Notes under the pieces: model-generated
Database searches by the model: none
What the model saw: the letters and a program-made list of their open reading frames with translations, nothing else
Told to the model about the DNA's origin: nothing
Shown here: piece by piece, positions 1,851-60,898 of the stretch
Layout of the letters: every line of letters begins with the position of its first letter
Numbering within the stretch: position 1 is the first letter of the stretch
Source of the DNA: Piromyces finnis finn
Taxonomy: Eukaryota; Fungi; Neocallimastigomycota
DNA: 64,000 nucleotides
Assembly (NCBI GenBank): GCA_002104945.1
Contig: MCFH01000006.1
Location: forward strand, 248,001 to 312,000
Direction: 5' to 3'
Translations under genes and position numbers: made by a program

Positions 1851-4800
1851 TATTCTTTCTTAATAGTTTTTTTTTTAAAGGCGCTTTTTTTTATTGCTTA
1901 AAAAATAAATATATATATATATATATAAATGAAAGTGTTTTTTTTTTACTTTAATATTTTATTTTATATAATTATAATTATATATGTTATCGAATATATT
2001 TTAATTTAATTTTATAAAATGGTTGTTATTTTTAAAATTACATGATCTATTGTAGTATTGGGTTTTTAATAATTTCATAATAAAACAAAAATTAATATAT
2101 ATAATAATATATATTAAGTGGTTATAATATTATTTCAAAAATAATAATAATAATAATTATTATAATTAAAAAAAGAAAGAAAGAAAAAATTAGTTTATTA
2201 TAAAATAAAAGGTAAAGTCAAAATAAAATAAAAAAAAAAAAAAAAACAATGCATATATATATTTTTATAGTTTTTTTTTTAATTAATTAATATAAAGTTT
2301 TATAGAATTATTATTTTTTTATTTTTTTTTATTTTATCTTATAATAATTAATGTAGAAAAGTATAATGTGAATAAGTAAAGTTTTTTTTAAACTTTTTAT
2401 TTCACCTACAAAAGATGGTTTTAACAAAAATCACTTTAAACTTTATTTCTATTTATTTTATTTTAATTAAATTTTTTTAAAAAAAAAAAAAAAAAATAAA
2501 AATATAAATAATAAAATTTTTTAATTTATTTTAATTAAAATTTTTTTTATTTTAAAAAGAAATTAAATTTTAATTTATTTTTTTTTTTTTTTTTTGATAG
2601 ATAGAATAAAAATAAGATTAATACTGAAAAATGGTAAATAGGGTATGAAGAAAGAAGGGAAAGAAAATATTTAAAAAAAGAAAAATAGAGAAATAGAACA
2701 TAGATTAATGGTAAAGAAACACAATACAATTGATATAAAAAAAATTAATCTTTATTATGAATTTAGGTAAATATTTTATAATTATAAAATATTTAATTAT
2801 ATTAAAACTTTAATTTAAAACATGATTTTAAATATAATTTTTACTTTTACTAATTATGGTATATATTTTGATGATGGTGTTGATAAATAAAAAAAAAAAA
2901 ATGTATGAGTAATAATAATAAGAGGTAAAAGAGTGTCAAGGCATAATAAAAGAATAAGAATAATAGAAATAATAAGAACTACGAATTACTATTATACTAA
3001 TTAGATAATATATATAATTAATGCATCATTCATAAATTAAGAGTTAAAATATTTATATAATAATATGTTAAACTGCATTATCTTACATATATCTATAAAA
3101 GAGAATTTTATTTTTTTATACATATATATATGAAAATGTACATAAATAAAAAAGGTTTTTATTAATAATTAGTATTATTTTATGATATCCATTCATAAAT
3201 ATTTTTAATATGATTTTCAATTTGGGTTTAAGGCTAGAGCAATATAAACATTTTTAGAAAATTATCGAAAACCATTATATAACATATAATTCAAGTATAT
3301 ATACAATTGGGTTGATTAATTTTTAATCTATCATTTAATATATATGTATATACTTTTGTAAAGATATTTAAATAATAATTAAAAAAGTGAATCATTTCCA
3401 ATGAATTTTACATATTAACTTTTAGAAATAAATTGTATTTAATAAAATCAAAGATGAAATGCAAATCATAATTTTTTTTTTTTTTAAAAAAATCTAATAG
3501 ATTTAATTTTTATTGTCTTAATAACATTAGAATATGAAAAACTTTTCTATAATAAATATAGATTAATAAGGAATGTATTTTTATCTCGTATATCTAAAAC
3601 ATTATCTTTCATTTTTATATTATAAAGTATATTATTATGTAGTTTGTAATGATAATATTATAAAATAAATATAGTAGATAAAAAATATATTTTAATTTAT
3701 TTTATGTACCATCAGAGTTTAATTAAAATAGGATTAAAAGTCATTTATCTTTAAACACTTCATCAAATAGTTTAAAAGTAATAAAAAAAAAATCCTTTTT
3801 TTTTTTTTTTTTTTAATTTTAGATATCAATACTTCATTTATTAGAGATTTCAGTTTACTTATAAAAAGTAAATAATATACTTTAACGTTTAGGTTCATTA
3901 TTATTATTTGATTATATTTAAATTATGATAAAAAATACATATTAAAAAAAGTTTAAATTTTTTATGATTTAAAAAAAATGATATTAGACAATTAAAAAAC
4001 CTTTTAAAATACTATTTAAATAGTAATAAGAATTGGAAAGAAAGAAAGAAAGAAAAAAAAAAAAGAAATGTAGAATAATAAAATAAAATAGATAAATTAT
4101 ATTCTAATAAAGTATGAAAGGTCATCACTACAATTGATTTAACTTTTTAAAAATTTTAAAAAAAATTTTTTTTTTTTTTAAACTAGGAAGAGAATACACT
4201 TTATTTGAAATATTACATTGTATTAGGTGATAATACATATTGATATAATAAATGATAAATAAATTTATACAAATATGCCTATTGATATTTTAATAGAGAT
4301 TAAAAAGAAAAAAAAAAAGAAAAGAGAGAGATGTCCAAGATAGAATAAGAATCAAATTTGATAGGATTCGTTTTACTAACCTATCTTTGAAAAAGGTATT
4401 AGTAAATTATTCCGCAGTAAAAATACTTTGCAAAAAAAAAAAAATTCATTCCCTGGAATTAGTTTATTATTAAAAATTTTGTTGCTGCTTAAAATTCAAA
4501 TTCAAATATAAAATATCCTTTTTTACTGATTTAAATAAAGTTTATTTTTTTTACTCTTCATGATTAATTCATAATCAACACATCATGTATAAAAGAATTG
4601 TAAAAAAAAAAAATTTTTTTATAAATTATGTGCTTTTATTCTTTATTTCTTGTTATTTTTTTCTTTTTCTCTAAAAAAAATATTTAATCTACATTTCTAT
4701 AAAAGGTAGGATACATTAAATATTTCAAACATTTTATTTCATGAAAATGTTTTTTTTTTTCCCTATTTTTCGTTTTTTCTTTATTTTTTCTTTATTTTTT

Positions 4801-4938
4801 TTTTGTTCTATTATTTTTTTTCCAGATTGCTTAATTTCAATACTGTTATAACAGGTTCAATTTTTCTGTTGGTTTACATCAGAAAAATGGTTTTATCTAT
4901 ATATGTAATTATTCATAATAGTTTAAAAAAAATCACAT

Positions 4939-6171
4939 TTAGAATTCCTTCTTAATGTTCTTTGGGTAGGTAGCACCACTTTGTTGAAGAACGATGTTAG
5001 CAACAAAATTACCGGCATCAATGCATCTTTCGAATGGTTGGTCTTGAACGAGTTGAGAAAGGAAACCACCAACGAAGGCATCACCAGCACCGTTCTATAT
5101 ATCACATCGAAAAAAAATATCATTAAATATTGAAAGTTTTTTGATTTATCATTTTTTTATAGATAGGTAATTTTGAATAGTTCAAGGAAGAAATACAATG
5201 TAAATATAAATGAAATAAAAATATATATATTAATAAGAAATAGGATAACACAAAAGTTAAAAAAATACATATCATTTGCTAAATTTAAATATAATTCCAC
5301 TTACAGAATCAACGATAGCAGACTTTTCTAAATCGTAAACTGGGTATTCAGTAACCTTACCATCACGAGCAACAATAGTTGGTTCAGCACCTTGAGTGAT
5401 GACAACAATTCTTGATCTGGACTTGTTAACCTTTTCAATAGCGGCCATCTTTAAGGCAATTTCCTTAACATCCTTAGTACCGTAGTTGTGGGAATCAGCG
5501 AAAGCAATAGCTTCAGATTCATTACCGAAAATGATATCCCAGTATGGAGCGGCTTCATCTAATAAGTTAGAGTAGAATTGTGGAAGGAATGGAGCAGAAA
5601 GGTTTTGAGTGAAGACCTTGTTGTTTTCAGCAGCGTGCTTAGCAACAGCCATAATAGATTCATGAGAGTGGGTGAAGAAGAAACCACCAATGTAGTAGAA
5701 CTTAGCCTTTTCAACAAGTTCCCAGTTTTCTGGCTTCTTTAAGTGTTCAATACTGTACTTATCAGCAGCAGATAAGTTAGCAACTAAAGATCTGTTGTTG
5801 TCAGTAATTAAACAGGCACAAGTACCAGTTGGAACATCGTTGTACATGTATTGGACGTTAACACCATCTTCTTCAGAGGCACTTTCGAGGGCCTTGGCGA
5901 AATCATCCTTACCAACACTACCAATGAAAGAGGTAGAGTTTGGTGGAAGAAGCCATTGAGCACCTCTAATAGAGTTTTGAGTAGCACCACCAGCAACGTA
6001 AGTAATCTTGTAGTTGTTCTTGAGTTCTTCATAAATTGGCATGTGCTTTTCTTCAGCCATGATAGAGTCGTTGGCATTTAAGTTGTACTTAGTAAGCATG
6101 TCCTTAGAGACATCGGCAATCATATCAAGAAGAGGATTACCCATACCAAGAAGAATTCTTTCAGTACTCAT
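4939..6171 (-). CDS. ADO1: Adenosine kinase (PfkB/ribokinase family), 2 exons
   Basis: Exon 1 6171-5305, intron GTAAGT...ATAG, exon 2 5094-4939. Contains LLGMGNPLLD, AGGATQNSIR, TGTCACLIT, NRSLVANLSAA, NLSAPF, FGNESEA and VVITQGAEPT. Splicing restores the anion-hole motif DSNGAGDAFVGGFL. Many C-ending codons (AAC, TAC, TTC) suggest high expression. Confidence 0.97.
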
Positions 6172-6542
6172 GTTGCTTTATATATAAATATATATATTTA
6201 ATTTATATAAAAAAACATTAAAATTATTAATTTATAATATTTTTATTTTTTATTATTTTCTCTTTATTTCAAAAATAAAATTGTGTTTTCTAGCAATAAT
6301 TTTGAATTTTAATATTGATGAATATACAATTAACTTCATATTATTTTTTATTGATGTTTATCAATTATATGTTATTTATTTATTATTTTATTTTTGATTA
6401 TCTTTTTTTTTTTTTCCTTTATTTTTTAATTTAAATGAACAATTATTATTTTTTTTGGAATTTAATACTTTTTTTTTTTTTTAATATTTCCTTTTTTTTT
6501 TTTTTCTTCTTCTTCTTCTTTTCTCTATCTTTCACTCATTTT

Positions 6543-6615
6543 ACCAATGATTGATTCTTTCTTTTAAAAGTAATGCTATTTACATTAACCGAAAATTTGG
6601 TGTTATTGCCAATTT
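6543..6615. promoter_or_regulatory. CCAAT-box cluster in the divergent ADO1/SF3B6 intergenic region
   Basis: CCAAT/ATTGG occurs in both orientations (ACCAATGATTG at ~6543; GCCAATTTCATTGG at ~6609) between two head-to-head genes. Motif match only. Confidence 0.3.
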
Positions 6616-7502
6616 CATTGGATATAAATAATGGGAAAATAATTTATTTAATCCTTTCTTGTAACTCATTCAATAAAAAGTTTCAAATGAATTAAGAACA
6701 AAATACATAAAAAAAAAATAAAAAAACATTTATAAAAATAAATAATATTCCTCCTTTCTTTTTTTTTTTTTTATTTTACCTTTTTTTATTTATTTATTTT
6801 TAAAATATTATAAATAGTATATAAATATTTTTTTTTTAATTGTAAAGCTTTCAATAATTTTGGCTGGTTCCCTTTTTTTTTATAATTATGATAGAATGAA
6901 TCATGTAATTAAGATCTTTGAATCATTGGATGATATTGAAATGTTTTGAAATATGATTGGTTTAAAAATGTAATAAAGTACATTATTTATTAAATCTATG
7001 TAAATAAAAAAATGGATTATGTTATATATAGATGGGACAAAGCAAAATTAAAAAAAAAAAGCATTTTATATTAATATTCTTTTGGGTAGTAAGGAATATG
7101 AATTGTTTTATTTTTTTAAAATATTATATTTTATAATATAGTTATTTAAAAATTAGTTTAGATAATTAATGCTTACTCTTTATAAAACCATAACTATACA
7201 AATAGAACTATTATATTTATCATTACTTTATACAGACTTGAAAATTTTTTAATTATTATTAAATAATAATAATAATAATAATAATAATATATTTAATTTA
7301 TAATATTTATAAAAAAAATAATAATTAAAAAATTTTTTAATAATTAATAAATTTTTTTTACATATATATTAATAAAAAAAACAAGAAAAAGAAAAAGAAA
7401 TTCTTTGAAATTTAATTTCATTATAAAGTAAAAAAAAAAAGGGAAATTATAAGTCTTTATAATCTAATAACAAAAAAAAAAAAAAAAACTTTAAAATAAA
7501 AA

Positions 7503-39900: not shown

Positions 39901-41190
39901 CTTTTATGATACCATATTTGATGAAACAAAGGATACACTTATGATTATAAGACTTAAAGAAAAGTTTGAAAGTATATTTAGATATGATTCTAATGGATTA
40001 CCAAAGGTTTGGAAACCGGGAGATGATATTGATGGACAATTCCAAAATTCATTAAATGAGGTAATACCTTAAATTGTTAACATAAATTTTTCTTTCTTTA
40101 TATAGATATAGATATATTTTTTTAAAAAAAAAAATAAATTAATATACTAAAAAAAAATTATGAATTCTAATAATAAATATTATCATTTTCTAATTTCTTT
40201 TCCTTATTCTATTTCTATATAAACTTTTTATTATTATTATTCTTTCATTCCTACTCTTTCACCTCCAAAAAATATATATATATATATATATATTAGGCAT
40301 ATAAATTATGTGATCTTTTTAATCGTATAAAAATACCACTTACCAAAATAAAAGAAATTACCGAAGTTGATAATATTGATGAAGATGCCTTAGAAATAAT
40401 AGAACCATCTAAAAAGAAGATGTTAATTAATCGTTTTAGAAATACAGTAGAAATATTATATATTGATGCTAAACATTCTGTAGTTTCGACTAAAGCCGAA
40501 ATACCCTATTGGATGTTTATTGTTATTATTGTATTAGGTTGGAATGAATTTATGGCAGTGCTTCATAATCCAGTATATTTCTTGCTAGCTTTAATAGCGG
40601 GAATTACTGTATATGCCTTATACCGTATGAATATGATACAACCTACCCTAAAAATTATTCGTTCTATTTTAATTGACCTTGGTCATCAAATTATTAATAA
40701 ACTTAATGCCATTGAAAATCAAAATCTTCTTAATGAACGTTATGAAATGTACAAACAAAACTATGACAATCCAAACTTTATGGCTGAATATGAAGATAGT
40801 AAAAGATATTCCGATATGAGTGGAGGTAGTAATAGTCCTTCGAAACCAACTCAAGGTCATGGTTTAGTTCAATCTTCTTCTCTTAGTCATCTTACCGATA
40901 CGGTTCATTTTATTGATAATACCGAAGAACTTGATAAACAATACGAAATGAATGTAAATCAAATTAAAAGAAATAAATTATTAAAACGTCACACCTTCCA
41001 AGTCCCATTAAATACCAAGAATAGAAATTATGATGATGAAGATGAGGATGAAACTGATTCTTATTCCTTTGAAATGGAAAATTTAGAAAAATTCGATGCT
41101 AATAATAGTGAAAATCGTTCCACTTTACATAGAAGAGTTAGTAAATCAAGTTTAAGTACTACAGCCACTAGTGAATTTGTAGATGCTTAA
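35483..41190 (+). CDS. SEY1: SEY1/RHD3 dynamin-like GTPase for homotypic ER fusion, ~16 exons
   Basis: Spliced motifs: [22 protein letters not shown] (P-loop), [111 protein letters not shown], and TM hairpin [27 protein letters not shown]. Confidence 0.96.
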
Positions 41191-44785: not shown

Positions 44786-47700
44786 CTAATTAGATATAAT
44801 GGTTTCACGGGTTACTGTAAATCTACCGATATTTTTTGATTCTGTACTGGTAGTCACATTACTACTAATAACTTTTGATTTATCATCTGGTCTTTTAATC
44901 ACCACTACAGAGGGCTTTAATTTTGATGATGGAGCAGTGATGGATGGGGTCATTGAGGTGGTTACTGAAGTAGTATTATTCACTATAGATGATGCATCAT
45001 TTGAAATGGAATTGTGTAAATTTGACTGTCTTTTGGTAGTTACTTTAGATATAGAATAATTTGGAGAATGTGGATCATTACTTTCTCTTGTTACTGTAAA
45101 ACGACTAGTACTATTATTGGTGTTAGAGCTCGATGTACTTGGTGAACGATAATGTCCTAAATTAGATCTCATCGAAAGTCTACTTGTATTTTTACTCACA
45201 ACTTGACTAGATTTTAATATTGGTGTGGTTGTCGATGCTGTAATCAAGGAAGAATTTTTATTGTTTTCTTTGGTAATAGAGCCAGAACCGGAATGTCCTT
45301 CAGTGAAACTTCCATCGCCTGTTAAATTTAAATCTCGATCAAATATTGTAAATGACTCATTACTAGCATCATTATCTTTCATTGGGAACTTTGATGAAGT
45401 ATTATCCTCAAGTACATTACTGTTCAACGATGAATTGGACTTGTAACTGAAACTAAATGGAGAATTTGGAATAACTGGTGGTTTTTCCATTGGAGTGGAA
45501 AGATGATGATAATATGGTGTGGATGGTGAGGATTCAGATAAATCATTCGTTTTCTCGGTTTCTGAAAGCACTTCATTATCTTCTGTTTTGTCCATGTCAT
45601 CTAAAATGTTATCGGTTTCCTTTTCAGACTTTTCATTATCTTTCGAACAACAGGAAAGAATGATACTGTTGTAACTATTATTATACTTGAAAAATTTAAA
45701 ATAATCACTATTGGTCTCAAGAATTTTATGAGGTGAAGGGGTGGAGTAGCTTGTTGATTCTAATGGATTTGTTTTCTCCTGGAGTATACTACTATTATTT
45801 TCATGACTCGAAACAGGTAGATTTGGCACATCCTGAACATCAGAATGATGTGCGGCATCATTGGTGCTCATGTCAACAGTAGAATTGGTTGTGATAATGG
45901 ATAAAGGTTTAACACTATTATGATACGAGCTAGGTTTAACGCTACTGAGCGCAGGAGAAGAAGCATTAGAATGAATTCCATTTTCAGTTAAAACTGAAGA
46001 TATAGAGCCAATAGTATGCTGATTGACATTGCTTATCGGCTGTTGTAAATAATTTGAAGTACTAACATTGACATTGGCACTGGTAGTAATATTACTTGAG
46101 GTTAAGGAATGATTGGAAGCCGGACGTCCAAGTCGGTTCTCTTCCATATAATTATTGAAAAGAGAAGAGGAACGATTGGCAAAGTCATTAATTTCTACTT
46201 CATGTTCCACCATGTCATGATAATTCTTAGGTTCATCAACAGAACTAGTATCGTTATTCAAAAGTCGAGTACTTAACCTATTCAAATTAATTTTTGAAGA
46301 TTCCATGGATTTCTTGGAACAAATAGAATTATTACTTGGTGACATAGCACCAGGGGTATATATCACTTGGAATCTAGAATTAGAACTCTTTGTTTTATGT
46401 GGTCGACTATATGGGGATACAGAAGGTGATGGAGTGATTGAAGATGTAGAAACAGAATGGAGTGAACTAAAGGATTTATTAATATCATGAGAATATAAAG
46501 AGGAAGGCACATTCTTTCCTTTTTCCAATTTTGAATCAATCTTTGATAGTGTGAACTGTTCATAATTATCCTCGGAATCCTCAATGTCATCTTTAACACT
46601 AGAATTATAATTGGTGTTGAGGTAGTCAGGATCAAGACTATTATTGCTTTTTCTTCTTTTATAGTCAGCTGCACTAGTAGTGGCAGAACGATGGTGTTCT
46701 TTATTAAGAAAATCACTAGAAAGAGGAGTGTGGGCAATGATAAGAGAATTAGATTTCTTTGGCTTAATGCCTGGATCTTTTTGTTTATACAATTCATTCT
46801 CATTATCATTCTTAGGAATAGATGAGCTAAACTTTAAAAGTGAAGAGGTCACTTTTTTATCCAATTCAGAGGTGAGATAAGAAGCTGAAGCTGGTTGTGA
46901 ACAGGATCTTTTTCTCATGGCTACTTTTGATGGAGAAGATGAAATGGATGACATTGTTGTAATAGATTCTCCATTTTCGTCTTCTTCACCTTTTGTAACA
47001 ATAAAGACACGATGACCATTATTACTTGGATATATGGGCTTTGTTACTGTAAATCTACCTTTTTGAAATTCTTGAACCATTGAATCTTCACTTTTTATAG
47101 ACTTTATCATTGGTGAATATGTTTTATAGGAGCGTACAGAAGAAATTGAAGGTGATCTTCTTCCTAAATTTGATAGTCCACCATCAGATTTTAAGGAGAG
47201 TTCCTTGGATGGTAATTTTGACTGATTCTCTTCAAATGGATGAGGATGGCTCTGAATGCTGACATCACTTTTTGGATTTTCTGTTGGTGTCTTGTTCTTT
47301 AGTTCGAAGGAGCAAAATGATTTACGGGATTGATGACTAATACCACCTTTTAAATTAATTTCTCTTTGACTTGTCGACAATGAACTTTCTGTATTATCTT
47401 TCTTTTCAACGGTATTTGTTGAATTGTCAGGGAGTGCGGTAATACTATCAGATTTAGTTTTATCATTGGTATTGGACCATAAAATTTTTGGGTTTAATGG
47501 TTTGTTAATTGGAGTGGAAGTTTTGTTGATTTCTGATGGAGTGAAACGCGTATCTTCGATGGCATCTTCATCAGGAAATTCTTGAATATGATGTAATGAA
47601 AAGGTTAAGGACTCGTTATCAGATACCTTTTGTAGACGACCTGGTCCATTCAAAATATTTAATTCGCGATGGCTTACCGATTGACTATCTTGACACGTCT

Positions 47701-49630
47701 TTCGTTTCAAATCACTACCTAATCGATCTAAATAATCTTGAGTAGTGGAGGATGCAAATGAACTTGTTGTATTGTAATTATTAAACATAGATTCACGTTT
47801 AGAAAAATTATTCTTCCTTTCCTCTTCAGTTGGGGGTATAAATATAGACATATCCAAGGGAGGACCCGAAGATTTAGTAGAACGATGAGTATGACCATAA
47901 TAAGAATGTGTGGTACGACCAGTACCTAATGAATATTCGCTTTCAGCATCAAGTCGAAGATCATCTTCCTCATCTGATATAGAAATAATATGAATACCAA
48001 CTACTTCTGCAAATTCACGTGCAGAAAGGTCTTCTGTACAAACTGTGTTGTTTTCTTCCATTTCCATACGGCGACGTAATTCGTCCCAATCATATCCACT
48101 ACCTGAATTGCAGGTTGAATAGGCATGATGAATAGAATCATCGATAGATGATGAAAGTGAATTTCTGTAATATGATTTTCTACCGTTCTTCTTTCCAAAT
48201 AACTTTTTAAAGGAATTCCATGTTTTTTTCTTTGTTTCTGTTGATACAGAATTTGGTGACACTAAATTATGATTTATTTTAGTTGATGGGGATAATGAAG
48301 ATGATGAATTAGAAACTATTATTTCTTGATCAACCTTGGTGGTATTAACACTTAATGAAGCATTATTTTTCTTATCCTTTTTCTTTGAATGTTTTAACAT
48401 TTTTTGTTTAGCCTTATCCTTTCCTTTTTTGTGGGATTCTTCCTTGAAAAACTCACTGTCTACGACAGGATTTCCTTTAGAAATAAAATTCATTGAAGGG
48501 GTATAAGATCTAACTTCAGTAATGGGTTCAAAAGAGGATTGATCTTTTTCAGTAATGTTCTGTTGAGTCATGGCAGTTGGTTTATTTCCGTTAGTATATA
48601 GTAAGCGATCCACTTCTTCATCTCCTAAACTATTATTATAACTTTCAGATCCATTAATAGGAGTGATACAACTGAATGCTGGACTACTAGGTGTTACCAT
48701 GCCAAGGCATGTTGGAAAAGAAAAATTCAATATTGAATCATTATCAAAATTAAATTTGAATTGATTTTCCTTTGAAATTTCTTTTGGAGTAGTAAAGGAA
48801 GATGATGATGGTGTATTACCACAATTACTTTCATTATATTTTTCTACAACTGCATTATTTTCTAATGAAAATGTCGTTGCTTCTGAATTGATGTCAGAAG
48901 GTCTTCTACTTTCTTTTCTCTCTGATCTATCAATGACCAAATTAAATTTACTTTTTTCATGGATTGTATCTGAAGTATGATCCGAAGTATAGCCAATGAA
49001 ACCTTGTTTTTCTTTAATATCAAAGTTATCATGTTGAAATTGCGAGGCTTCATTATAACTTCTGATAAGATTTGTTGATGATACATCATTTTTTGGAGCA
49101 TCCTGAAATTTACGAACTGGTTGTTTTCCTGTATATTTACCTGTCATTGCATCTTTCTTTGAGAGACTTGAAGAGTGATGGAGAAAGCCTTCCATTATAT
49201 TTGATTTAATTGCAAAATCTCTTTGCTCAGATTTACTTTTTTTATATTTCTTATTCTTGCGCTTTTCTTTTTTAACCTTTTTACTTTTTTCTTTTTTGGA
49301 TAATTCATATTGATTTTCTTTTATTACTTTTTGGTGATGTTGAATATCTTTTAATAAAGATGAATCAACACCAACAACGACATTTTCTTTGTTATCCTCA
49401 TTACTTTCGTTTAATTCATTATCACCATTATTTTTATTTTCTTCATTATTAGTAGTTGATTTGACTACTTTAAGATGTGAAAGAGTAGACGTATTACTTT
49501 TATTTTTCTTGTCAACTATTGTTTTTTGATTTGGTTTTTGGTGGTCTTTTTCTTTATGTTCTATTCCATTCAAATTATTAGATATAATATCATTTTTGTT
49601 GGTTCTATTGAATAGCTTGAATGAATTCAT
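44786..49630 (-). CDS. Large intronless Ser/Asn/Lys-rich, mostly disordered protein of unknown function (1614 aa) with four [S/G]RFxV motifs
   Basis: 4845-bp uninterrupted ORF with clearly higher GC than its flanks and non-repetitive protein-like composition. One probable ordered block (YDWDELRRRMEMEE...DLSAREFAEVVGIHIISISDEEDD...GPPLDMSIFIPPTEEERK). I recognise no catalytic domain. Confidence 0.85.
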   Translation of the reverse strand: MNSFKLFNRTNKNDIISNNLNGIEHKEKDHQKPNQKTIVDKKNKSNTSTLSHLKVVKSTTNNEENKNNGDNELNESNEDNKENVVVGVDSSLLKDIQHHQKVIKENQYELSKKEKSKKVKKEKRKNKKYKKSKSEQRDFAIKSNIMEGFLHHSSSLSKKDAMTGKYTGKQPVRKFQDAPKNDVSSTNLIRSYNEASQFQHDNFDIKEKQGFIGYTSDHTSDTIHEKSKFNLVIDRSERKESRRPSDINSEATTFSLENNAVVEKYNESNCGNTPSSSSFTTPKEISKENQFKFNFDNDSILNFSFPTCLGMVTPSSPAFSCITPINGSESYNNSLGDEEVDRLLYTNGNKPTAMTQQNITEKDQSSFEPITEVRSYTPSMNFISKGNPVVDSEFFKEESHKKGKDKAKQKMLKHSKKKDKKNNASLSVNTTKVDQEIIVSNSSSSLSPSTKINHNLVSPNSVSTETKKKTWNSFKKLFGKKNGRKSYYRNSLSSSIDDSIHHAYSTCNSGSGYDWDELRRRMEMEENNTVCTEDLSAREFAEVVGIHIISISDEEDDLRLDAESEYSLGTGRTTHSYYGHTHRSTKSSGPPLDMSIFIPPTEEERKNNFSKRESMFNNYNTTSSFASSTTQDYLDRLGSDLKRKTCQDSQSVSHRELNILNGPGRLQKVSDNESLTFSLHHIQEFPDEDAIEDTRFTPSEINKTSTPINKPLNPKILWSNTNDKTKSDSITALPDNSTNTVEKKDNTESSLSTSQREINLKGGISHQSRKSFCSFELKNKTPTENPKSDVSIQSHPHPFEENQSKLPSKELSLKSDGGLSNLGRRSPSISSVRSYKTYSPMIKSIKSEDSMVQEFQKGRFTVTKPIYPSNNGHRVFIVTKGEEDENGESITTMSSISSSPSKVAMRKRSCSQPASASYLTSELDKKVTSSLLKFSSSIPKNDNENELYKQKDPGIKPKKSNSLIIAHTPLSSDFLNKEHHRSATTSAADYKRRKSNNSLDPDYLNTNYNSSVKDDIEDSEDNYEQFTLSKIDSKLEKGKNVPSSLYSHDINKSFSSLHSVSTSSITPSPSVSPYSRPHKTKSSNSRFQVIYTPGAMSPSNNSICSKKSMESSKINLNRLSTRLLNNDTSSVDEPKNYHDMVEHEVEINDFANRSSSLFNNYMEENRLGRPASNHSLTSSNITTSANVNVSTSNYLQQPISNVNQHTIGSISSVLTENGIHSNASSPALSSVKPSSYHNSVKPLSIITTNSTVDMSTNDAAHHSDVQDVPNLPVSSHENNSSILQEKTNPLESTSYSTPSPHKILETNSDYFKFFKYNNSYNSIILSCCSKDNEKSEKETDNILDDMDKTEDNEVLSETEKTNDLSESSPSTPYYHHLSTPMEKPPVIPNSPFSFSYKSNSSLNSNVLEDNTSSKFPMKDNDASNESFTIFDRDLNLTGDGSFTEGHSGSGSITKENNKNSSLITASTTTPILKSSQVVSKNTSRLSMRSNLGHYRSPSTSSSNTNNSTSRFTVTRESNDPHSPNYSISKVTTKRQSNLHNSISNDASSIVNNTTSVTTSMTPSITAPSSKLKPSVVVIKRPDDKSKVISSNVTTSTESKNIGRFTVTRETIISN

Positions 49631-49664
49631 TTCTATAAAAAAAAAATATAATATAAATAAAATA

Positions 49665-50245
<581 letters not shown>

Positions 50246-50604
50246 TCTATATCTATTAATTATTTATTAATATCTATTAATTGAATGTTTAATTTAATCC
50301 CACCATATCTTAATGTCTTGTTTATGTTATTAAATTATATTCCATTTAAAAAAAGGCTTATATAATTATAGATTTTATGTTTCTTTGTTTAAGTATCCTT
50401 TTGTCTCAATATAATAAATTTTTAATCATTAATATTTAAAAAGTTAAAAACAAAAAAAAAATGTTACTCTAAAAGGATTAATTTACATTTAAAAATTGAA
50501 TTGCCTATATCCAAAAGCTATTAAAAGATAATTTATAAAAAATTATAAAAATATATTAATATTTCTTGTATATTATATTTTTACTAATAATATTATTGTT
50601 TATT

Positions 50605-50870
<266 letters not shown>

Positions 50871-53800
50871 ATACTATTATTATTTTATTGTTGATATTAT
50901 TAATGTTTTTTATAAAAAAAAAAAATACCAGATATATGGTTAGCTATTATTGGGGAGTAATAAAAATGTTTTATTTTTATAGGGATAATATTTGCTTAGA
51001 TTGAATTATTATTTTTTTGGTTTTCTTTGTAACTTTTTTTTATTTTGTTTCTTAAATATTATAAGAAAAAATATAAATATTATTTAAAATAAATAATATT
51101 TATAAATAAAAGATTATATTTTATCTAAATAAATAAATAAATAAATATTAAATACACTTTAGTAAAAAGAAATTAGTAATTTATTGTTATATAAAAATTA
51201 ACCTCTTGAATAATAACTTGTTAGTTGAAATAAAGTTTCATTTGTTAATAGTTCTACTTCTCACCATTAATTTCTAATAAAAAATATAAAATTAAAAATA
51301 TTATTATTAATTAGTAACATTGTGCTTAATAGTAAAGTAAAATAAAAAATCACTATATATTATTAATTTAATCTATGCTATTTATGTTGCAAGGTCCATC
51401 TAATTTATTGTTTTCGTAATAAGCAAACATTCTTTAAAATAAAACTATCTTTTATTAAGACATTTAATTATTTATATTTATAGCATAGTAAAAAAAAAAT
51501 AGATTATTCTTTAATTCGTATATTCCTTTTTTTTTTTATGATTAAGCATATAGTATTAACGGGATAACACGTTATTGATTTAATGTATAAATAAAAGCAT
51601 TATCGCAATTTTCTTTTCTTTGAATAGAATAAAAATTTTATTTCATCAATGAAAAAGGATTTTGTTTGTTGGCTTTAAAAATTATTGTTTTAATAAAACT
51701 TTAAAATATTATTATTCAATAGTATTGATTATTTGTCTAATTTTGAAATTTTAATCAAAGTCTATTTCTAATGTATCAAAAAATAAAATATTATTATTAT
51801 ATTCATATTTATAAAATGAACTTTTTAAAAAGTACTTTTTATTTCTTTTCATCATTATTGGCTTATTATTTTATTCTTTTTTTTTATTTAAAAAAAAAAA
51901 ATTTCATTGCCATTTATTTTGTTTTATATATTATAATTTTAATCTTTAAATTTATTTGTTGGTAAAAATTTTTTTTTGGTATTTACTAAATAATAAAGTT
52001 TAAACATAAAATAAATAATTAATTAAATAAATGAATAATTAATAAAATAAATAAATATTACTAATTAATATTTAAATGTATGAATAACTAATAATTAAAT
52101 AAATAATAAAAGTAGAGAAAGGAATACATTTCATTCATTCTCTCTACCCATTATTTAATATTAAAAATAGGATTAAACCAAATATTATGCATGCATAGAA
52201 TTATACAGCTTTCATTGATGCCCATATACCCTATACTAAGTACTTTTTTTCTTTCTTTCTTGACATTTACCCTTTTTTTTCTAACCAATTTCTATATAAA
52301 ATTCCAATATATTGCAATATATTGTAATCAATACAAATATATGGTATTAGTCAATAGTTCATAGTATTATAAAATGAATAATTTTAATAGAAATTAAAAT
52401 TATTGTTCAATACTTCATTGATATAAATTTATACAGAATTGAAAAGAAGTAATAAAAATATATTATATATTATATATGAAAGATTATATTCTAATATATT
52501 TAAGATAAATTAATTTAAGCAACTAAATTTTAATTTATAAAACTTTATCATTTAAAATGCATATATTAAAGGATTTATTAAATCAATATTTAATATATAA
52601 TTTCATATTTTTTTAATTAATACTATTTTTGATAGAATAAATTCCATTACACTCTAATATATGATTCTAGAAATTAAATAGTAAATGAAACTCTATTCAT
52701 TGATATATTTTCAATTCAATTGTAATAGAATAAGGAAAAGAAAGAAGTAAAAGTTCATGGCTAACGCTATAAAAAAAAAAAGATAGTCAAGATAAAAAAA
52801 ATAAATAATTTATTCCTATTGATATCTTTGATATCTTTTAAAATAAATTAGTTGTTGAATGGTTCATGCCTATTTAGTATCTTTTATTTTTCAATTTTTT
52901 AAAAAAAATTGATAGATAAATAGAGTTATCAACAGTTATAATTTTTTTTAGAATGCTTTGGCTTATTCTATATACCAAATTTAGAAAACGACACTTTTTT
53001 TTTATACCAAAAATGTAGCATTTTTAAACTAAATGCCCTATATATTATAATGTATTGTAATATATTTTATAAACTATATTGTACTACATTAAAGTACTAA
53101 TAAAAATCCCATCTTTTATTTCTGGAAAGTGCATAAAAAAAAGTTCAAAACTTTAATTATTAAAATAAATTAGATTTTATGGATAATAATAAATTATTTA
53201 AAATAAATTAAATAATATATGGTGGGAAATGTATTATAAAATACACGTTTATATATTATTAATAATAAATTAAAAAATTTTATAAAGTATAATTTGGATA
53301 GATTGAAGAATTTCCATAAAAGGAAAATTATCTTTTTTTTATTTTCCATGTTGACTTGAAAATGATGATTGAAACTATTGTAAAATAATGTATACAAATC
53401 AAAATAAAGGATTTATTATTGGGCAATGTATTGAAATAATGTATTTTAAAAAAAGTCCCATGAATAGAAAGTAAAATGGGAGATAAACTAAAATCCAGTG
53501 TTCCTTTAGCAGATATGACATAATTAAAGGTTATACCAACGTATTAATGGTCTATTATAGAAAAAAGATGGATTATTGTCTTTTATAAGAAATTATTATT
53601 ATCAAACATAGACATGGTAGGTCTACAGATCAAATCTACATTAAATTCAATGATTATAACATACATTACATAAATTTATGTAAATTTTACATTTATTGAA
53701 AGTTTTATCCTGTTTTAGCCTTGTATTAAATATATTACTGGTATGGATGAATTAAATGAATGAAAATAAAGATATTATATTATTCATTTTATCTATTTCA

Positions 53801-56500
53801 TTACATTTTATTCATTTTATCTATTTTATACATTGGCATATTATTAGAAAAGAGCTTTTTTTTTTTAATTAAAGTATGCATTTGACAAAATAATAAAATT
53901 TGATTTTTTTTTTATTTTGTTATTTTAAATTAAAAAATTAAAGTTTAATTAAAATTATTAAAATCAAATCATTTTATTTTATCTTTTATTTATCTTGTTA
54001 TTGTTTTTTTTTTTTTTTTTAATTTAAAAATTTAATAAAAATTTTACTTTTTTAAAAGGAAAAAAAAAAAAAAAAAAAAGCCAGAAAGAAATGGCAAAAC
54101 AAAAAGTTTAAAAAAAGTGAATAAAGAGAGTAGTAGAAAAAAGAAAAAGTTTTAAGAAAAAAACAATACTAAATATTATAAACTTTAAAAAGTTTGTATT
54201 GAATTTTAAATTTCATTAATAAATAGTTTAAATATTTATAAATATTGAAAAAAGCATCATTTTAAAAGACTACATTAGATATGAAAATGCAATGCATCTA
54301 AAAAAAAAAAAGTATCATGATGTTGATTTATTTGGTTTATTTCCTTTATCAATTTGAAAAAAAAAATGGAAATATATCTTTTTATAGTTATATTAAAGAA
54401 TGTTTTTTTCAACTCTAATAATATAAATGTTAATATTATTATTATTAAAAAAAAGTATAATTTTTAATAATTTATACTTTTAAAGTTTGTTTTTTTTTTT
54501 AAAAAAAAAAATAAAGTATATTAAGATTTCATGAATTCTATATCTTTTTTTTTTTTAAAGTTTTATTTATTTAGTATTAAAGATACACTTTTATCAGTTT
54601 CTTTTTCATTAAATAATAGTATTATTGTTTGATCATTTTTTATATAGAATAAAAAAAAAGATTAGGGTGTATTGAAATAAATGATATATAGAGTACATTA
54701 TTAGTAATAAAAGTTTATTTTTTATAGTAGAATGAGGTTAGTATGTAATAGTAAAAAGTATTTTAAAGATAAATTTTAAGAAAGAAAGAAAGAAATATCT
54801 TTATAATTTACTATTAAAAAGTTTATAACTCATAATTATAGTTTATATTATAATTATAAAAGATGAATATTACAACGAATAAAGTGATGGGATAACAAAA
54901 AAATTATCATCTAGTATTAATATTAATTTTTATCTTTGAATTATAATAAAAGTAGGTTGTATAGATTACACATAATTTACACATTTATGATTATAATAAA
55001 AAAAAAAAGGCATTTCAATATGGTTTTATAAAATGACTTTTCTATGAATTAAAAAAATTTCTTTTTTTACTTCTTCTTTAAAATCACCACAAAAATTTTT
55101 TAAATTTCTCCTGATTTAAAGTTTAAAATAAATAAATGATATAAATTAAATTTATATTAAATTTAGGTTACATTTTAATTTATTTATATACTAATGATTA
55201 TACTACAATAAATATAATAATAGTAATTTTGATTTAATTTGTGTAACTTTGATGGAAAAAAAGAATATTAAAAAAGAATATTAAAAAAATTGGAATTTTT
55301 TTTTTATTAAAAAAAAAAGATGACTCTTTAAAAAAAGACCTTTTTTTATATAGATATAAAAGAATAGAGTAGGAGGTTAGACCTAAAAATAATAATAATT
55401 ATTATAAGAAATATAAGAAATAGAGAATGAAAAAGAAGGGAATAATTAGAAAAAAATTGATAATATGATTTCTATTTTATAAGGAAAAAAAAAAAGATAT
55501 CTTTCATTTAAAAGGCTAAACTATGAATAGTATTTAATGGATAATGGAGTAAAATCAATTGATTTATTAATTATTATAATTATTTATTCATTTATTAAAT
55601 TTATAAAAAATTTTGTTTTTGTTGTGATAGTTAATTACGGATTTATGCAAAATATAAAGAATCGAGAATAAAAGAAAACAGACAGTATTCATTTTTCATT
55701 TTTATTAAGAAAAAAAAAAGAGAGTTGTCAAAAGATTTTAGTATTCCTTTTATTAACATAATAAAAAAAAAATAATTATTGTTATGATGATAAAAAAGAA
55801 AAAAAATCAAAATTCCTTACCATAAAATATTGCCTAAAAAAAATGATTTATATACAGAGAGTTGAATTTATTATCAAATAATAATAACAAGAATAAAAAA
55901 AAAAAAAAAAGGTTTTTTAAAGAATTCAATTATACTAATCTGAATAATTGAATAGACTTTTTGAATTAATAGGGAATAACTTAGAATTTATGGGGGAATT
56001 GAATACTAATATTTCATTGTTCCTTTTCTTTTAATATTATTTTCAATCCTTTATCCTATTAAAAGTAATAATAATAATATTATTAATAGATAAAGATAAC
56101 AATATACTGTCAAATACAAACCATTAAAGAAAATATTTATAGAAATGTTGTTTATAATAAATGTGGATGATACCACTTTATTTCATGTCGTACAAAAAAA
56201 TAAAGAAATTCTTGTAATCATTAAAGAAATATTTCTTTTTCAAAAAAAATAAAATTTAAATGAACAAAAAAAAAAAAGTATTTAAAGAAGAAATAAATGA
56301 ATAAATTATTATGCATATTAGTTTTATAAACTTTAAAATTATATTTAATATAAATAATATTTATAATATTGTATATAAATACTATTTTGTTTTCTCTTGT
56401 ATATTCAATAGAAATTTCATTCAAAATTAAAAAGTATTAATAGTTGCATTGTTTCTGTTAAATAACATGAAATCTTTACTATTTAGTTTGTTTAATTCAC

Positions 56501-60660
<4,160 letters not shown>

Positions 60661-60898
60661 TTATAGTTTAAAAGCAAAACATTTCGAAAAAAAAGTTTAT
60701 GGAAATAAGGCAAAATGAAAAACCTTTTAATTTTTTAATATAATATATATTATATATACTTAATAGGCATGGTATATTAGTATAAAGATATAGATACATT
60801 TTGTTTTATTTTATCCAATTATCCAATCTTGTTTTTTAAATTGGTAAAACTATATAAAATCTGCTTTAATTACTAGTGTAAAGTCTTAACTTTTTTTG

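What the first reader, a model, noticed from the sequence alone, without database searches (positions are those of the whole stretch)
44786..49630. 1614-aa disordered protein with four [S/G]RFx[V] motifs: possible WNK-SPAK/OSR1-type CCT docking scaffold in a fungus
Seen: KGRFTVTK (~47045-47056), SRFQVIY (~46354-46365), SRFTVTRE (~45092-45103) and GRFTVTRE (~44812-44823, at the extreme C-terminus), scattered through non-repetitive Ser-rich sequence. All four have S or G before RF and V at +4. Established: RFx[V/I] is the docking motif for the CCT domains of the SPAK/OSR1 kinases, found in WNK kinases and cation-chloride cotransporters (WNK1 carries GRFQV). This osmotic and volume-sensing module is best known from animals and is not described in budding yeast. 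Inference: a multivalent kinase-less scaffold or substrate for a CCT-domain kinase, implying an animal-like ion/volume signalling circuit in this lineage.
Basis: partly seen in the sequence, partly recalled or inferred. Interest (0 to 1): 0.72.

Follow-up and report, generated by a model that had tools for sequence, protein, structure and literature searches.

The report
Fungal disordered protein with conserved WNK-docking motifs
A giant, mostly disordered protein of the anaerobic gut fungus Piromyces finnis carries four to five strictly conserved RFxV motifs, the kind that dock onto WNK/OSR1-pathway "CCT" domains in animals. In this fungus the only CCT-like domains sit on the WNK kinases, so the pathway appears to be wired the other way round; no binding has been tested.

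Summary
The 1614-aa ORF (window 44786-49630, minus strand) has four [S/G]RFxV motifs, where composition predicts 0.02. All four are invariant in seven orthologues from anaerobic gut fungi, and so is an unreported adjacent R-x-F-x-V (GHRVFIVT).

The protein has no Pfam domain and is predicted to be mostly disordered. It has a 1469-aa paralogue in the same genome. Both belong to an uncharacterised family of early-diverging fungi (chytrids, Umbelopsis). A profile built only from an N-terminal block found 18 distant members, and 17 of them carry [KR]GRFx[VILM].

The genome does encode CCT-like domains, but only in its two WNK kinases. These have the WNK CCT1 fold, and all six peptide-contact positions are kept or conservatively replaced.

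The two OSR1/SPAK-type (FRAY) kinases have no detectable CCT domain and carry three or four RFx[V/I] motifs themselves. In 88 fungal FRAY tails the mean is 3.7 motifs against 0.05 expected.

My best reading is a multivalent ligand, scaffold or substrate of the WNK CCT-like domain, in a pathway with receptor and ligand swapped relative to animals. Binding is untested: co-folding gave no verdict.

The scan had flagged the paralogue separately (s1-173847).

The parts
44786..49630 (-). Single-exon gene for a 1614-aa, Ser/Asn/Lys/Thr-rich, mostly disordered protein (P0001)
   Evidence: ORF. Full-length orthologues of 1440-1722 aa share the same start MNSFKLFNRTNKN, among them the N. californiae and A. 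robustus gene models. No Pfam family.
49592..49630 (-). Invariant N-terminus MNSFKL.N.TNKN; function unknown
   Evidence: Alignment A1; coordinates.
47822..48094 (-). Block A (residues 513-603): DWxELRRRME, then xAREFAxxVGIxII..DEEDD, then GPxLDMSIFxPP. This is the homology anchor of the family.
   Evidence: BLASTP against the paralogue gives E 5e-12. Alignment A3. The A3 profile finds chytrid and Umbelopsis relatives. AlphaFold2 predicts two short helices here.
47039..47065 (-). Motif 1, QKGRFTVTK (RFxV with -2 Gly, +3 Thr, +4 Lys). This is the family hallmark.
   Evidence: Invariant in 7 orthologues. QKGRFT[VI] is kept in the paralogue clade. [KR]GRFx[VILM] is present in 17 of 18 distant relatives.
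46994..47017 (-). GHRVFIVT, an R-x-F-x-V variant motif 15 residues after motif 1. Together with motif 1 it forms a tandem pair.
   Evidence: Invariant in 7 orthologues. The paralogue has HHYKFVII at the same place. Distant relatives have SRFx[VL] 20-29 residues after the first motif. The R-x-F-x-V binding mode is seen in PDB 6FBK (PMC12413468).
46358..46384 (-). Motif 2, SNSRFQVIY
   Evidence: SNSRF is invariant. Position x is Q or T, and V is replaced by I in one orthologue.
45083..45109 (-). Motif 3, TSRFTVTRE
   Evidence: SRFTV is invariant. The paralogue has SRF[TI][IV][IT]RE in the equivalent C-terminal position.
44894..44926 (-). Conserved island SKLKPSVVVIK (beta-prone; role unknown)
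   Evidence: SKLKPS and VVI are invariant.
44789..44830 (-). Motif 4, IGRFTVTRETIISN, ending the protein
   Evidence: GRFTVTRET is invariant, one of the two longest invariant runs. The paralogue ends in SRFTVTRNAIN.

Best explanation
The gene encodes a giant, intrinsically disordered member of an uncharacterised protein family of early-diverging fungi. The family's conserved functional elements are short linear motifs of the RFx[V/I] / RxFx[V/I] class.

I propose that these motifs dock, by beta-strand addition, into the CCT1-like domain that follows the kinase domain of the fungus's two WNK kinases.

The protein offers four to five such sites along about 750 residues of flexible chain. The WNKs carry a coiled coil and a SAM-like C-terminal domain. 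The protein would therefore act as a multivalent scaffold, or a docked substrate, that clusters WNK. It would either compete with or co-assemble the FRAY (OSR1/SPAK-type) kinases, which in fungi bear the same motifs instead of a CCT domain.

Functionally it would supply in trans what animal WNKs (long C-terminal disordered region with RFxV motifs) and TSC22D adaptors supply.

Shown here:
- the motifs, their statistics and their conservation;
- the family;
- the CCT1-type fold and the conserved pocket residues of the fungal WNK domain;
- the absence of a detectable CCT domain in the fungal FRAY kinases and the presence of RFxV motifs in them.

Inferred, not shown: that motif and domain bind each other, and everything downstream of that (scaffolding, condensates, osmotic or crowding signalling).
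For: **Motifs**
- Counts are 20- to 200-fold above expectation, and the motifs are invariant islands in 43-69%-identical orthologues.
- The paralogue P0008 (E 5e-12 in block A only) keeps motifs at the same relative places: QKGRFT[VI], HHYKFVII, SRFTIIRE and a C-terminal SRFTVTR.
- A profile of block A alone, containing no RF motif, found 18 relatives outside the gut fungi. Of these, 17 carry [KR]GRFx[VILM] downstream and 13 carry a second SRF 20-29 residues later.
- The flanks match validated animal CCT ligands: -2 G/S, +3 T, +4 basic, no Pro (PMC12413468).

**Receptor**
- PF12202 and a lineage-specific CCT profile each find only the two WNK loci in the 56-Mb genome.
- Both kinases are true WNKs, with GKGAYK..EVAW and no beta3 lysine.
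- A spliced WNK from a close relative scores OSR1_C 24.6 bits, above the cut-off.
- The AlphaFold2 model has pLDDT 86 and a beta3-alpha2 topology.
- The best structural matches are human WNK2 CCT1 (6elm), WNK2 CCTL1 bound to an RFXV peptide (6fbk), WNK3 and the WNK1 autoinhibitory domain, followed by the OSR1/SPAK CCT domains.
- The six OSR1 peptide-contact residues I450/F452/D459/E467/L468/L473 (10.1101/2021.08.19.456998) align to V/F/D/E/M/V, and all six are invariant in 10 fungal WNKs.

**Context**
- The FRAY kinases (best PDB hit OSR1, 2.6e-89) have no CCT hit even at E<=1, whereas an animal OSR1 control scores 78 bits.
- 88 fungal FRAY tails hold a mean of 3.7 RFx[VI] motifs against 0.05 expected.
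- The WNKs themselves hold none.
Against: - No binding evidence. The single co-folding job gave no verdict.
- The CCT-like hits are modest in sequence terms: 21-25 bits for PF12202, with E about 0.03-0.06 against the isolated WNK2, WNK1 and OSR1 CCT domains (WNK3 kinase-CCT1 didomain 9.7e-6).
- AlphaFold2 places motif 1 and the RxFxV motif in a small intramolecular beta-meander at pLDDT 58-74. If real, this could occlude them or point to a different role.
- In distant relatives the +2 position is sometimes M or L, which animal CCT domains are not known to accept.
- Absence of a CCT domain in FRAY rests on Pfam and profile searches only; no structure was predicted for those tails.
- No SLC12 effector was found.
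Confidence: 0.55

Rival explanations
1. The motifs are functional docking sites, but for a receptor other than a CCT-like domain. Candidates include a surface on the FRAY or another kinase, or an unrecognised fungal peptide-binding domain. On this reading the resemblance to animal RFxV ligands is convergent.
For: Binding is untested, and co-folding gave no verdict. Some family members have M or L at +2. Other invariant islands of unknown function (block A, SKLKPSVVVI, YRSPS) show that the protein has additional partners.
Against: - The only known receptor class for RFx[V/I] exists in this genome with its contact residues conserved.
- The flanks match the measured CCT preferences.
- The same motif class decorates the fungal FRAY kinases, the canonical WNK partners. 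FRAY usually co-occurs with WNK across eukaryotes (PMC3218828).
Confidence: 0.2
2. The RF-T-V-T / R-V-F-I-V / S-V-V-V-I segments are structural beta-strands. They would form a small folded beta-meander or mediate reversible beta-zipper self-assembly of the disordered protein, rather than being ligands for another protein's domain.
For: AlphaFold2 predicts four strands over residues 852-898 at pLDDT 58-74, while the rest of the segment is below 50. All conserved islands of this type alternate polar and beta-branched residues.
Against: - Arg and Phe are strictly invariant, whereas the beta-prone x position varies (Q/T/E/I/S) across paralogues and FRAY tails. That pattern fits side-chain recognition rather than a generic strand.
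- Motifs 2-4 are isolated single strands with no partner strand nearby.
- CCT ligands themselves bind as added beta-strands (PMC12413468), so beta propensity is expected under the main hypothesis as well.
Confidence: 0.12
3. The motifs are phosphorylation-site consensus sequences (Arg upstream of Thr in RFTVT) for a basophilic kinase, conserved as regulatory phosphosites rather than as docking sites.
For: Three of the four motifs have Thr at +1 and +3. The protein is 18% Ser and carries many SP/TP sites.
Against: - Thr is not conserved within the motif class: RFQVI in motif 2, and RFEVS, RFIID and RFSVN in the FRAY tails.
- Phe and Val/Ile are conserved, which a basophilic phosphosite would not require.
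- An invariant Phe directly after Arg is not a feature of common R-x-x-S/T consensus sites (established knowledge).
Confidence: 0.08
4. Chance or compositional artefact in a low-complexity ORF.
For: The genome is extremely AT-rich and the protein is of biased composition.
Against: - Poisson 4e-9 for [SG]RFxV.
- The motifs are invariant across seven orthologues, kept in a paralogue clade, and recovered in distant relatives by a search that did not use them.
- The RFTVT coding pattern is not enriched genome-wide (32 hits against 48 for the reversed control), yet three of the hits lie in this gene.
Confidence: 0.01

Closest known systems
Long isoforms of TSC22D proteins (TSC22D1/2/4), adaptors of the animal WNK pathway
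   Same: Both are mostly disordered proteins without enzymatic domains. In both, a short conserved region carries several closely spaced CCT-binding motifs (canonical RFxV plus variants) that bring WNK-pathway components together (10.64898/2026.04.15.718729). The fungal family likewise has a conserved tandem pair ([KR]GRFxV, then 15-29 residues, then SRFxV or RxFxV), plus extra copies in the giant members.
   Different: There is no sequence homology and no TSC22/leucine-zipper box (Pfam: 0 families). TSC22D is reported to have arisen with Metazoa (10.1101/2024.02.13.579840). The fungal family has its own anchor, block A. No NRBP-type CCT partner was detected in this genome.
C-terminal disordered region of animal WNK1/WNK4 (and kinase-deficient KS-WNK1)
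   Same: Both are long disordered chains carrying several GRFxV-type motifs. GRFQVT of WNK1/4 compares with GRFTVT here, with the same -2 Gly and +3 Thr.
   Different: Here the motifs are on a separate, kinase-less gene with no similarity to WNK. The fungal WNKs are short (558-576 aa), lack a long disordered tail and have no RFx[V/I] motif. In animals the receptor for the WNK motifs is the CCT domain of OSR1/SPAK, which the fungal FRAY kinases lack.
RFxV-bearing substrates of SPAK/OSR1, such as the N-termini of NKCC1/KCC3 cotransporters
   Same: One or more RFx[V/I] motifs lie in a disordered, Ser/Thr-rich region and serve to recruit a kinase to its substrate.
   Different: This protein has no membrane or permease domain. 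No SLC12 C-terminal domain was detected in the genome.
Human WNK2 CCT-like 1 domain bound to an RFXV peptide (PDB 6FBK) and OSR1 CCT bound to GRFQVT (PDB 2V3S)
   Same: The fungal WNK domain is predicted to have the same beta3-alpha2 fold (TM 0.68-0.71 to 6fbk/6elm). It sits at the same position directly after the kinase domain. It keeps the Phe, Asp and Glu and has conservative replacements at the other three contact positions.
   Different: Identity to the human domains is only 19-24%. The structure is predicted, not solved, and no complex was obtained.
Tails of fungal FRAY (OSR1/SPAK-type) kinases
   Same: They carry the same motif flavour ([KR][SG]RFx[VI]), in several copies, within a disordered tail, in the same species.
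   Different: Those motifs are attached to a kinase domain and a terminal leucine-zipper-like coiled coil. They have no block A and no detectable homology to the window protein.

Membership tests
RFx[V/I] / RxFx[V/I] CCT-docking short linear motif | Core R-F-x-V/I (or R-x-F-x-V/I) | tested here: met
   Four RFxV motifs and one RVFIV.
RFx[V/I] / RxFx[V/I] CCT-docking short linear motif | Flanks compatible with measured CCT preferences (-2 Gly/Ser, +3 Ser/Thr, +4 basic or Pro, no Pro inside) | tested here: met
   The -2 residue is G, S, S, G. The +3 residue is T, I, T, T. The +4 residue is K, Y, R, R. There is no Pro. Sequence; rules from PMC12413468.
RFx[V/I] / RxFx[V/I] CCT-docking short linear motif | Lies in an accessible, disordered region | tested here: inconclusive
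   The protein is largely disordered (pLDDT 43), but motif 1 and the RxFxV motif are modelled as a small beta-meander at pLDDT 58-74. Motifs 2-4 were not modelled.
RFx[V/I] / RxFx[V/I] CCT-docking short linear motif | Conserved in orthologues while the flanks diverge | tested here: met
RFx[V/I] / RxFx[V/I] CCT-docking short linear motif | A CCT or CCT-like domain encoded in the same genome | tested here: met
   Two, both in WNK kinases.
RFx[V/I] / RxFx[V/I] CCT-docking short linear motif | Physical, Arg/Phe-dependent binding to the CCT pocket | not testable with these tools
   Co-folding gave no verdict. This needs peptide-binding assays.
WNK kinase (as the origin of the motif-bearing chain) | WNK-type kinase domain, or homology to WNK | tested here: not met
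   No kinase domain and no Pfam hit. The upstream DNA is AT microsatellite. Orthologues start at the same Met.
TSC22D family | C-terminal TSC22/leucine-zipper box | tested here: not met
   Pfam finds nothing in the window protein or in 10 relatives.
CCT/PF2 domain (the proposed receptor, in the fungal WNKs) | PF12202 match over the curated cut-off | tested here: met
   24.6 bits against a cut-off of 22.4 on the spliced WNK L055, and 22.9 bits on the genomic exon. Single exon pieces score 21.2-21.6 bits, below the cut-off.
CCT/PF2 domain (the proposed receptor, in the fungal WNKs) | Three-stranded sheet plus two helices, resembling solved CCT1 domains | tested here: met
   AlphaFold2 pLDDT 86 with topology E-E-E-H-H. 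Foldseek top hits are 6elm, 6fbk, 5o2c, 2lru and 5g3q, followed by the OSR1/SPAK CCT domains.
CCT/PF2 domain (the proposed receptor, in the fungal WNKs) | Peptide-contact residues (OSR1 I450, F452, D459, E467, L468, L473) | tested here: met
   They align to V, F, D, E, M, V and are invariant in 10 fungal WNKs. The residue list is from 10.1101/2021.08.19.456998.
OSR1/SPAK (FRAY, GCK-VI) kinases of this genome | Kinase domain closest to OSR1/SPAK, with the T-loop RKTFVGTPCWMAPE | tested here: met
   OSR1 2.6e-89 and SPAK 1.1e-87, against 3e-63 for the next family. Sequence.
OSR1/SPAK (FRAY, GCK-VI) kinases of this genome | C-terminal CCT domain | tested here: not met
   No PF12202 hit in the tails of the P. 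finnis kinases or of six other fungal FRAY kinases even at E<=1, whereas the animal control scores 78 bits. No genomic hit at those loci.

The most novel reading that the evidence does not exclude
In early-diverging fungi the ancient WNK-FRAY module is wired in reverse of the animal one. The CCT receptor sits only on WNK. The RFxV ligands sit on the FRAY kinase tails and on a dedicated, previously unrecognised family of disordered adaptor proteins.

The giant gut-fungal members (this gene and its paralogue) would provide in trans the long multivalent disordered region that animal WNKs carry in cis. They would nucleate WNK/FRAY assemblies, analogues of 'WNK bodies', in response to crowding or osmotic stress. 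That would be an independent, non-metazoan solution to the role filled by TSC22D and the WNK disordered tail.
Probability: 0.25. Interest if true: 0.8.

Novelty: new variant of a known kind. Interest (0 to 1): 0.62.

Why it matters
CCT-RFxV docking is the organising principle of the animal WNK-SPAK/OSR1 pathway, which controls blood pressure, cell volume and crowding sensing. Recent work argues that its disordered adaptors (TSC22D) and the long disordered tails of WNK arose with Metazoa.

Several things would follow if the fungal motifs bind the WNK CCT1-like domain:
- The docking code is older than animals.
- Its direction (which partner holds the domain and which holds the motif) is evolutionarily flexible.
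- Fungi evolved their own disordered multivalent adaptors.

It would also give a function to a family of 'hypothetical proteins' found in chytrids, including the amphibian pathogen Batrachochytrium, in Mucoromycota and in rumen fungi. Finally, it would offer simple, genetically tractable systems (for example Spizellomyces) in which to ask what the ancestral WNK-FRAY module senses.

Tried and rejected
- **Co-folding** of the WNK CCT-like domain (A4) with residues 845-890 (A5): score 0.27 against a mark of 0.34, no verdict. This is neither support nor evidence against.
- **Expression check.** Orthologues lie on about 5-kb JGI contigs holding only this ORF, but their ends do not prove that they are transcripts.
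- **Paralogue search** with the C-terminal half as a protein query found only the gene itself. The paralogue was reached through a degenerate RFTVT DNA pattern.
- **That pattern is not enriched genome-wide**: 32 hits against 48 for the reversed control. Most hits are out of frame or encode Ser rather than Arg.
- **PF12202 hits L003 and L004** are spurious, with no gene context.
- **PF24889 (CCTL2_WNK) and PF03522 (SLC12)** gave no hit in the genome. These are weak negatives, because the search is six-frame and exon by exon.
- **Other motif classes considered by eye and rejected.** PP1 RVxF: the Phe is in the wrong position. For block A and the PSVVVI island I considered calcineurin LxVP and PxIxIT and the B56 LxxIxE motif. 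The key positions vary or are missing for LxVP and B56; PSVVVI is left open as a PxIxIT-like site.
- **A hidden upstream kinase exon** is unlikely. The upstream DNA is AAT microsatellite, and all orthologues start at the same Met.
- **Spliced models.** The P. finnis WNK and FRAY genes are split by introns. I searched them exon by exon by reference and did not join the exons. For an intact CCT-like domain I used naturally spliced contigs of close relatives instead (L055, L057).
Full report
**The object.** The window comes from a 56.5-Mb, 232-contig genome of about 17% G+C. The NCBI name of a protein encoded elsewhere in it identifies the organism as the anaerobic gut fungus Piromyces finnis.

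The ORF is exactly as described: 44786-49630 on the minus strand, 1614 aa. It has no Pfam family. Upstream of it lies AAT microsatellite. Its neighbours are an unrelated membrane-protein exon at 40420-41190 and kilobases of AT repeats that produce meaningless poly-Ile ORFs.

Six other full-length proteins (1440-1722 aa, 43-69% identical) were found, all from Neocallimastigomycota. Two are annotated hypothetical proteins of Neocallimastix californiae and Anaeromyces robustus. All start with the same MNSFKLFNRTNKN, so this is a real, single-exon gene.

- From composition one expects 0.19 RFx[VI] and 0.017 [SG]RFxV; four are seen (Poisson 4e-5 and 4e-9, with shuffles in agreement).
- GRFTVT is encoded twice in the whole genome, both times in this gene.
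- All four motifs are invariant across the seven orthologues. Five of the eleven invariant runs of 5 or more residues are motifs of this class, including the two longest.
- The fifth is GHRVFIVT, 15 residues after motif 1. It is an R-x-F-x-V, the alternative register that CCT domains also bind and that WNK2 CCTL1 engages in PDB 6FBK (PMC12413468).
- The flanks fit validated animal ligands: -2 Gly/Ser in all four, +3 Thr in three, +4 basic in three, and no Pro.
- An AlphaFold2 model of residues 498-904 is mostly disordered (pLDDT 43). It shows short helices in a conserved block and a low-to-moderate-confidence beta-meander over motif 1 and the RxFxV motif.

**A family, not a one-off.** I located it with a degenerate DNA pattern. 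It is a 1469-aa paralogue, P0008, on contig C169.

P0008 is similar to the window protein only in a roughly 130-residue 'block A' (E 5e-12): xAREFAxxVGI..DEEDD followed by GPxLDMSIFxPP. Nevertheless it and its five orthologues keep motifs at the corresponding places: KLSRF[ET][VI], QKGRFT[VI], HHYKFVII, QHRKFDIT, SRFTIIRE and a C-terminal SRFTVTR.

A profile of block A alone, run against 1.84 billion representative proteins, returned 27 hits. Those beyond the gut fungi are hypothetical proteins of Batrachochytrium dendrobatidis and B. salamandrivorans, Kappamyces, Gorgonomyces and Umbelopsis, plus unnamed metagenomic proteins of 116-776 aa. None has a Pfam family.

The query contained no RF motif. 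Even so, 17 of these 18 carry [KR]GRFx[VILM] downstream of block A, and 13 carry a second SRF 20-29 residues later. The tandem RFxV pair is therefore the hallmark of an old family of early-diverging fungi. The gut-fungal members are giant versions with extra C-terminal copies.

**The receptor side.**
- PF12202 (OSR1_C) found two credible places in the genome. Both lie directly after WNK kinase domains.
- These are true WNKs: the lysine is in the glycine loop (GKGAYK), beta3 reads EVAW, and the HRD motif is intact.
- The CCT-like domain is split by an intron in both genes. Instead I used naturally spliced contigs of close relatives from JGI collections.
- Those contigs show 558- and 576-aa WNKs built as kinase, CCT-like domain, coiled coil and a SAM-like C-terminal domain, with no RFx[V/I] motif at all.
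- The intact domain passes the PF12202 cut-off.
- As a profile, its top five PDB hits are WNK3, WNK2, WNK1 and two OSR1 CCT entries.
- It folds with pLDDT 86 into three strands plus two helices.
- It is structurally closest to human WNK2 CCT1, including the RFXV-peptide complex 6FBK.
- The six OSR1 peptide-contact residues align to V/F/D/E/M/V, invariant in ten fungal WNKs.
- A profile of this fungal domain finds nothing else in the genome.

**The unexpected part.** A scan for the STE20 signature GTPxWMAPE gave nine kinases. The two with GTPCWMAPE are OSR1/SPAK-type (FRAY) kinases: OSR1 2.6e-89 against 3e-63 for the next family.
- Their tails have no CCT domain.
- Instead they carry SKGRFIID, RSRFEVS and PSRFIIT in one kinase, and KSRFIID, KKGRFSLL, KKGRFEVQ and HGRFTME in the other. 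Each tail ends in a coiled coil.
- This is general. Among the 120 best relatives, none of the fungal ones (chytrids, Mortierello-, Mucoro-, Glomero- and Blastocladiomycota, Basidiobolus; no Dikarya) lists PF12202, while the nematode OSR1 in the same list does.
- 88 fungal tails of 250 aa or more hold a mean of 3.7 RFx[VI] against 0.05 expected. Most are preceded by [KR][SG]. The animal OSR1 holds none.
- I found no paper describing this. The literature says only that FRAY usually co-occurs with WNK (PMC3218828), and that TSC22D adaptors and long WNK disordered tails arose with Metazoa.

**Interpretation.** The most economical reading is that the window protein is a multivalent ligand of the WNK CCT1-like domain. 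It would act as a scaffold or docked substrate, sharing that receptor with the FRAY kinases. In function, though not in ancestry, it would parallel TSC22D adaptors and the RFxV-bearing disordered tail of animal WNKs.

Steps that are shown:
- the motifs, their conservation, and the family;
- the CCT1-type receptor domain with a conserved pocket;
- the swapped distribution of domain and motif.

Steps that are inferred: binding itself, multivalent clustering, and any link to osmotic or crowding signalling.

The one co-folding job gave no verdict. Expression could not be checked. No SLC12 effector was detected.

The rivals are a different receptor, an intramolecular or self-assembling beta element, or a set of phosphosites. 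Each is weaker than the main reading, but none is excluded without a binding assay.

**Verdict.** Its interpretation is partly right. These are very probably CCT-type docking motifs on a kinase-less disordered protein, but the receptor is on WNK rather than on the SPAK/OSR1-type kinase, and an animal-like ion-transport circuit is not demonstrated.

I rate it a new variant of a known kind, of moderate-to-high interest, resting entirely on computational evidence.

Noticed in passing
L051 (G000:C24:516000-525000, + strand) and L052 (G000:C167:1141500-1151000, - strand); proteins P0014-P0132: The two OSR1/SPAK-type (FRAY) kinases of this genome, and 88 fungal FRAY kinases from chytrids to Mucoromycota, have no detectable CCT domain. 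Their tails instead carry 3-5 [KR][SG]RFx[VI] motifs (mean 3.7 against 0.05 expected) followed by a leucine-zipper-like coiled coil. An animal OSR1 in the same hit list has the CCT domain and no such motif.
   Followed up: yes
L005 (G000:C1:987000-996999, about 4540-7381 +) and L006 (G000:C222:507000-516999, about 4897-7283 +); spliced relatives L055:534-2210 and L057:732-2462: There are two short WNK kinases (558-576 aa) built as kinase, CCT1-like domain, coiled coil and a C-terminal SAM-like domain (EDWxxLGLTVxAxRLLKNAL). They have no long disordered tail and no RFxV motif. An intron splits the CCT-like domain at the same place in both paralogues.
   Followed up: partly
L040:1969-6378 (+) = G000:C169, protein P0008: This is a 1469-aa paralogue of the window protein (Piromyces finnis BCR36DRAFT_585809) with six or seven RFx[VI]-type motifs.
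   Followed up: yes
L041:3570-4676 (-) = G000:C189:814000-822000: This is the tail of a MARK/Kin1-like kinase, ending in a KA1-like LKFEVEICKLPRL segment. It carries a single RTRRFTVTG motif in a disordered Pro/Thr-rich linker and could be another CCT client. I did not check its conservation.
   Followed up: no
L041:852-2903 (-): A 683-aa ORF with reverse-transcriptase-like sequence (non-LTR retrotransposon type) sits next to the MARK-like gene.
   Followed up: no
window 49600-60700: Kilobases of AAT/ATT microsatellite and tandem AT-rich repeats (G+C 9-12%) lie upstream of the gene. They produce long meaningless poly-Ile/Leu 'ORFs', for example 56571-60671 (1366 aa).
   Followed up: no
window 46994-47065 (residues 852-898 of the protein): AlphaFold2 models motif 1, the RxFxV motif and two flanking segments as a four-stranded beta-meander at pLDDT 58-74, inside an otherwise disordered chain. 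It is unclear whether this is a real mini-fold or only reflects beta propensity.
   Followed up: partly
P0139, P0145, P0148, P0149, P0151, P0154 (small family members): Seven of the 18 distant family members end in a DSG[IVY] motif a few residues from the C-terminus (for example RRDSGVNI, SVDSGIVLE). The giant gut-fungal proteins lack it. Its function is unknown; it resembles a phosphodegron.
   Followed up: no
window 44894-44926, 45137-45151, 48094-47822: Further invariant islands have no assigned function: SKLKPSVVVI (PxIxIT-like), YRSPS, and block A (AREFAxxVGI..DEEDD / GPxLDMSIFxPP). Block A is conserved out to chytrids and Umbelopsis.
   Followed up: partly
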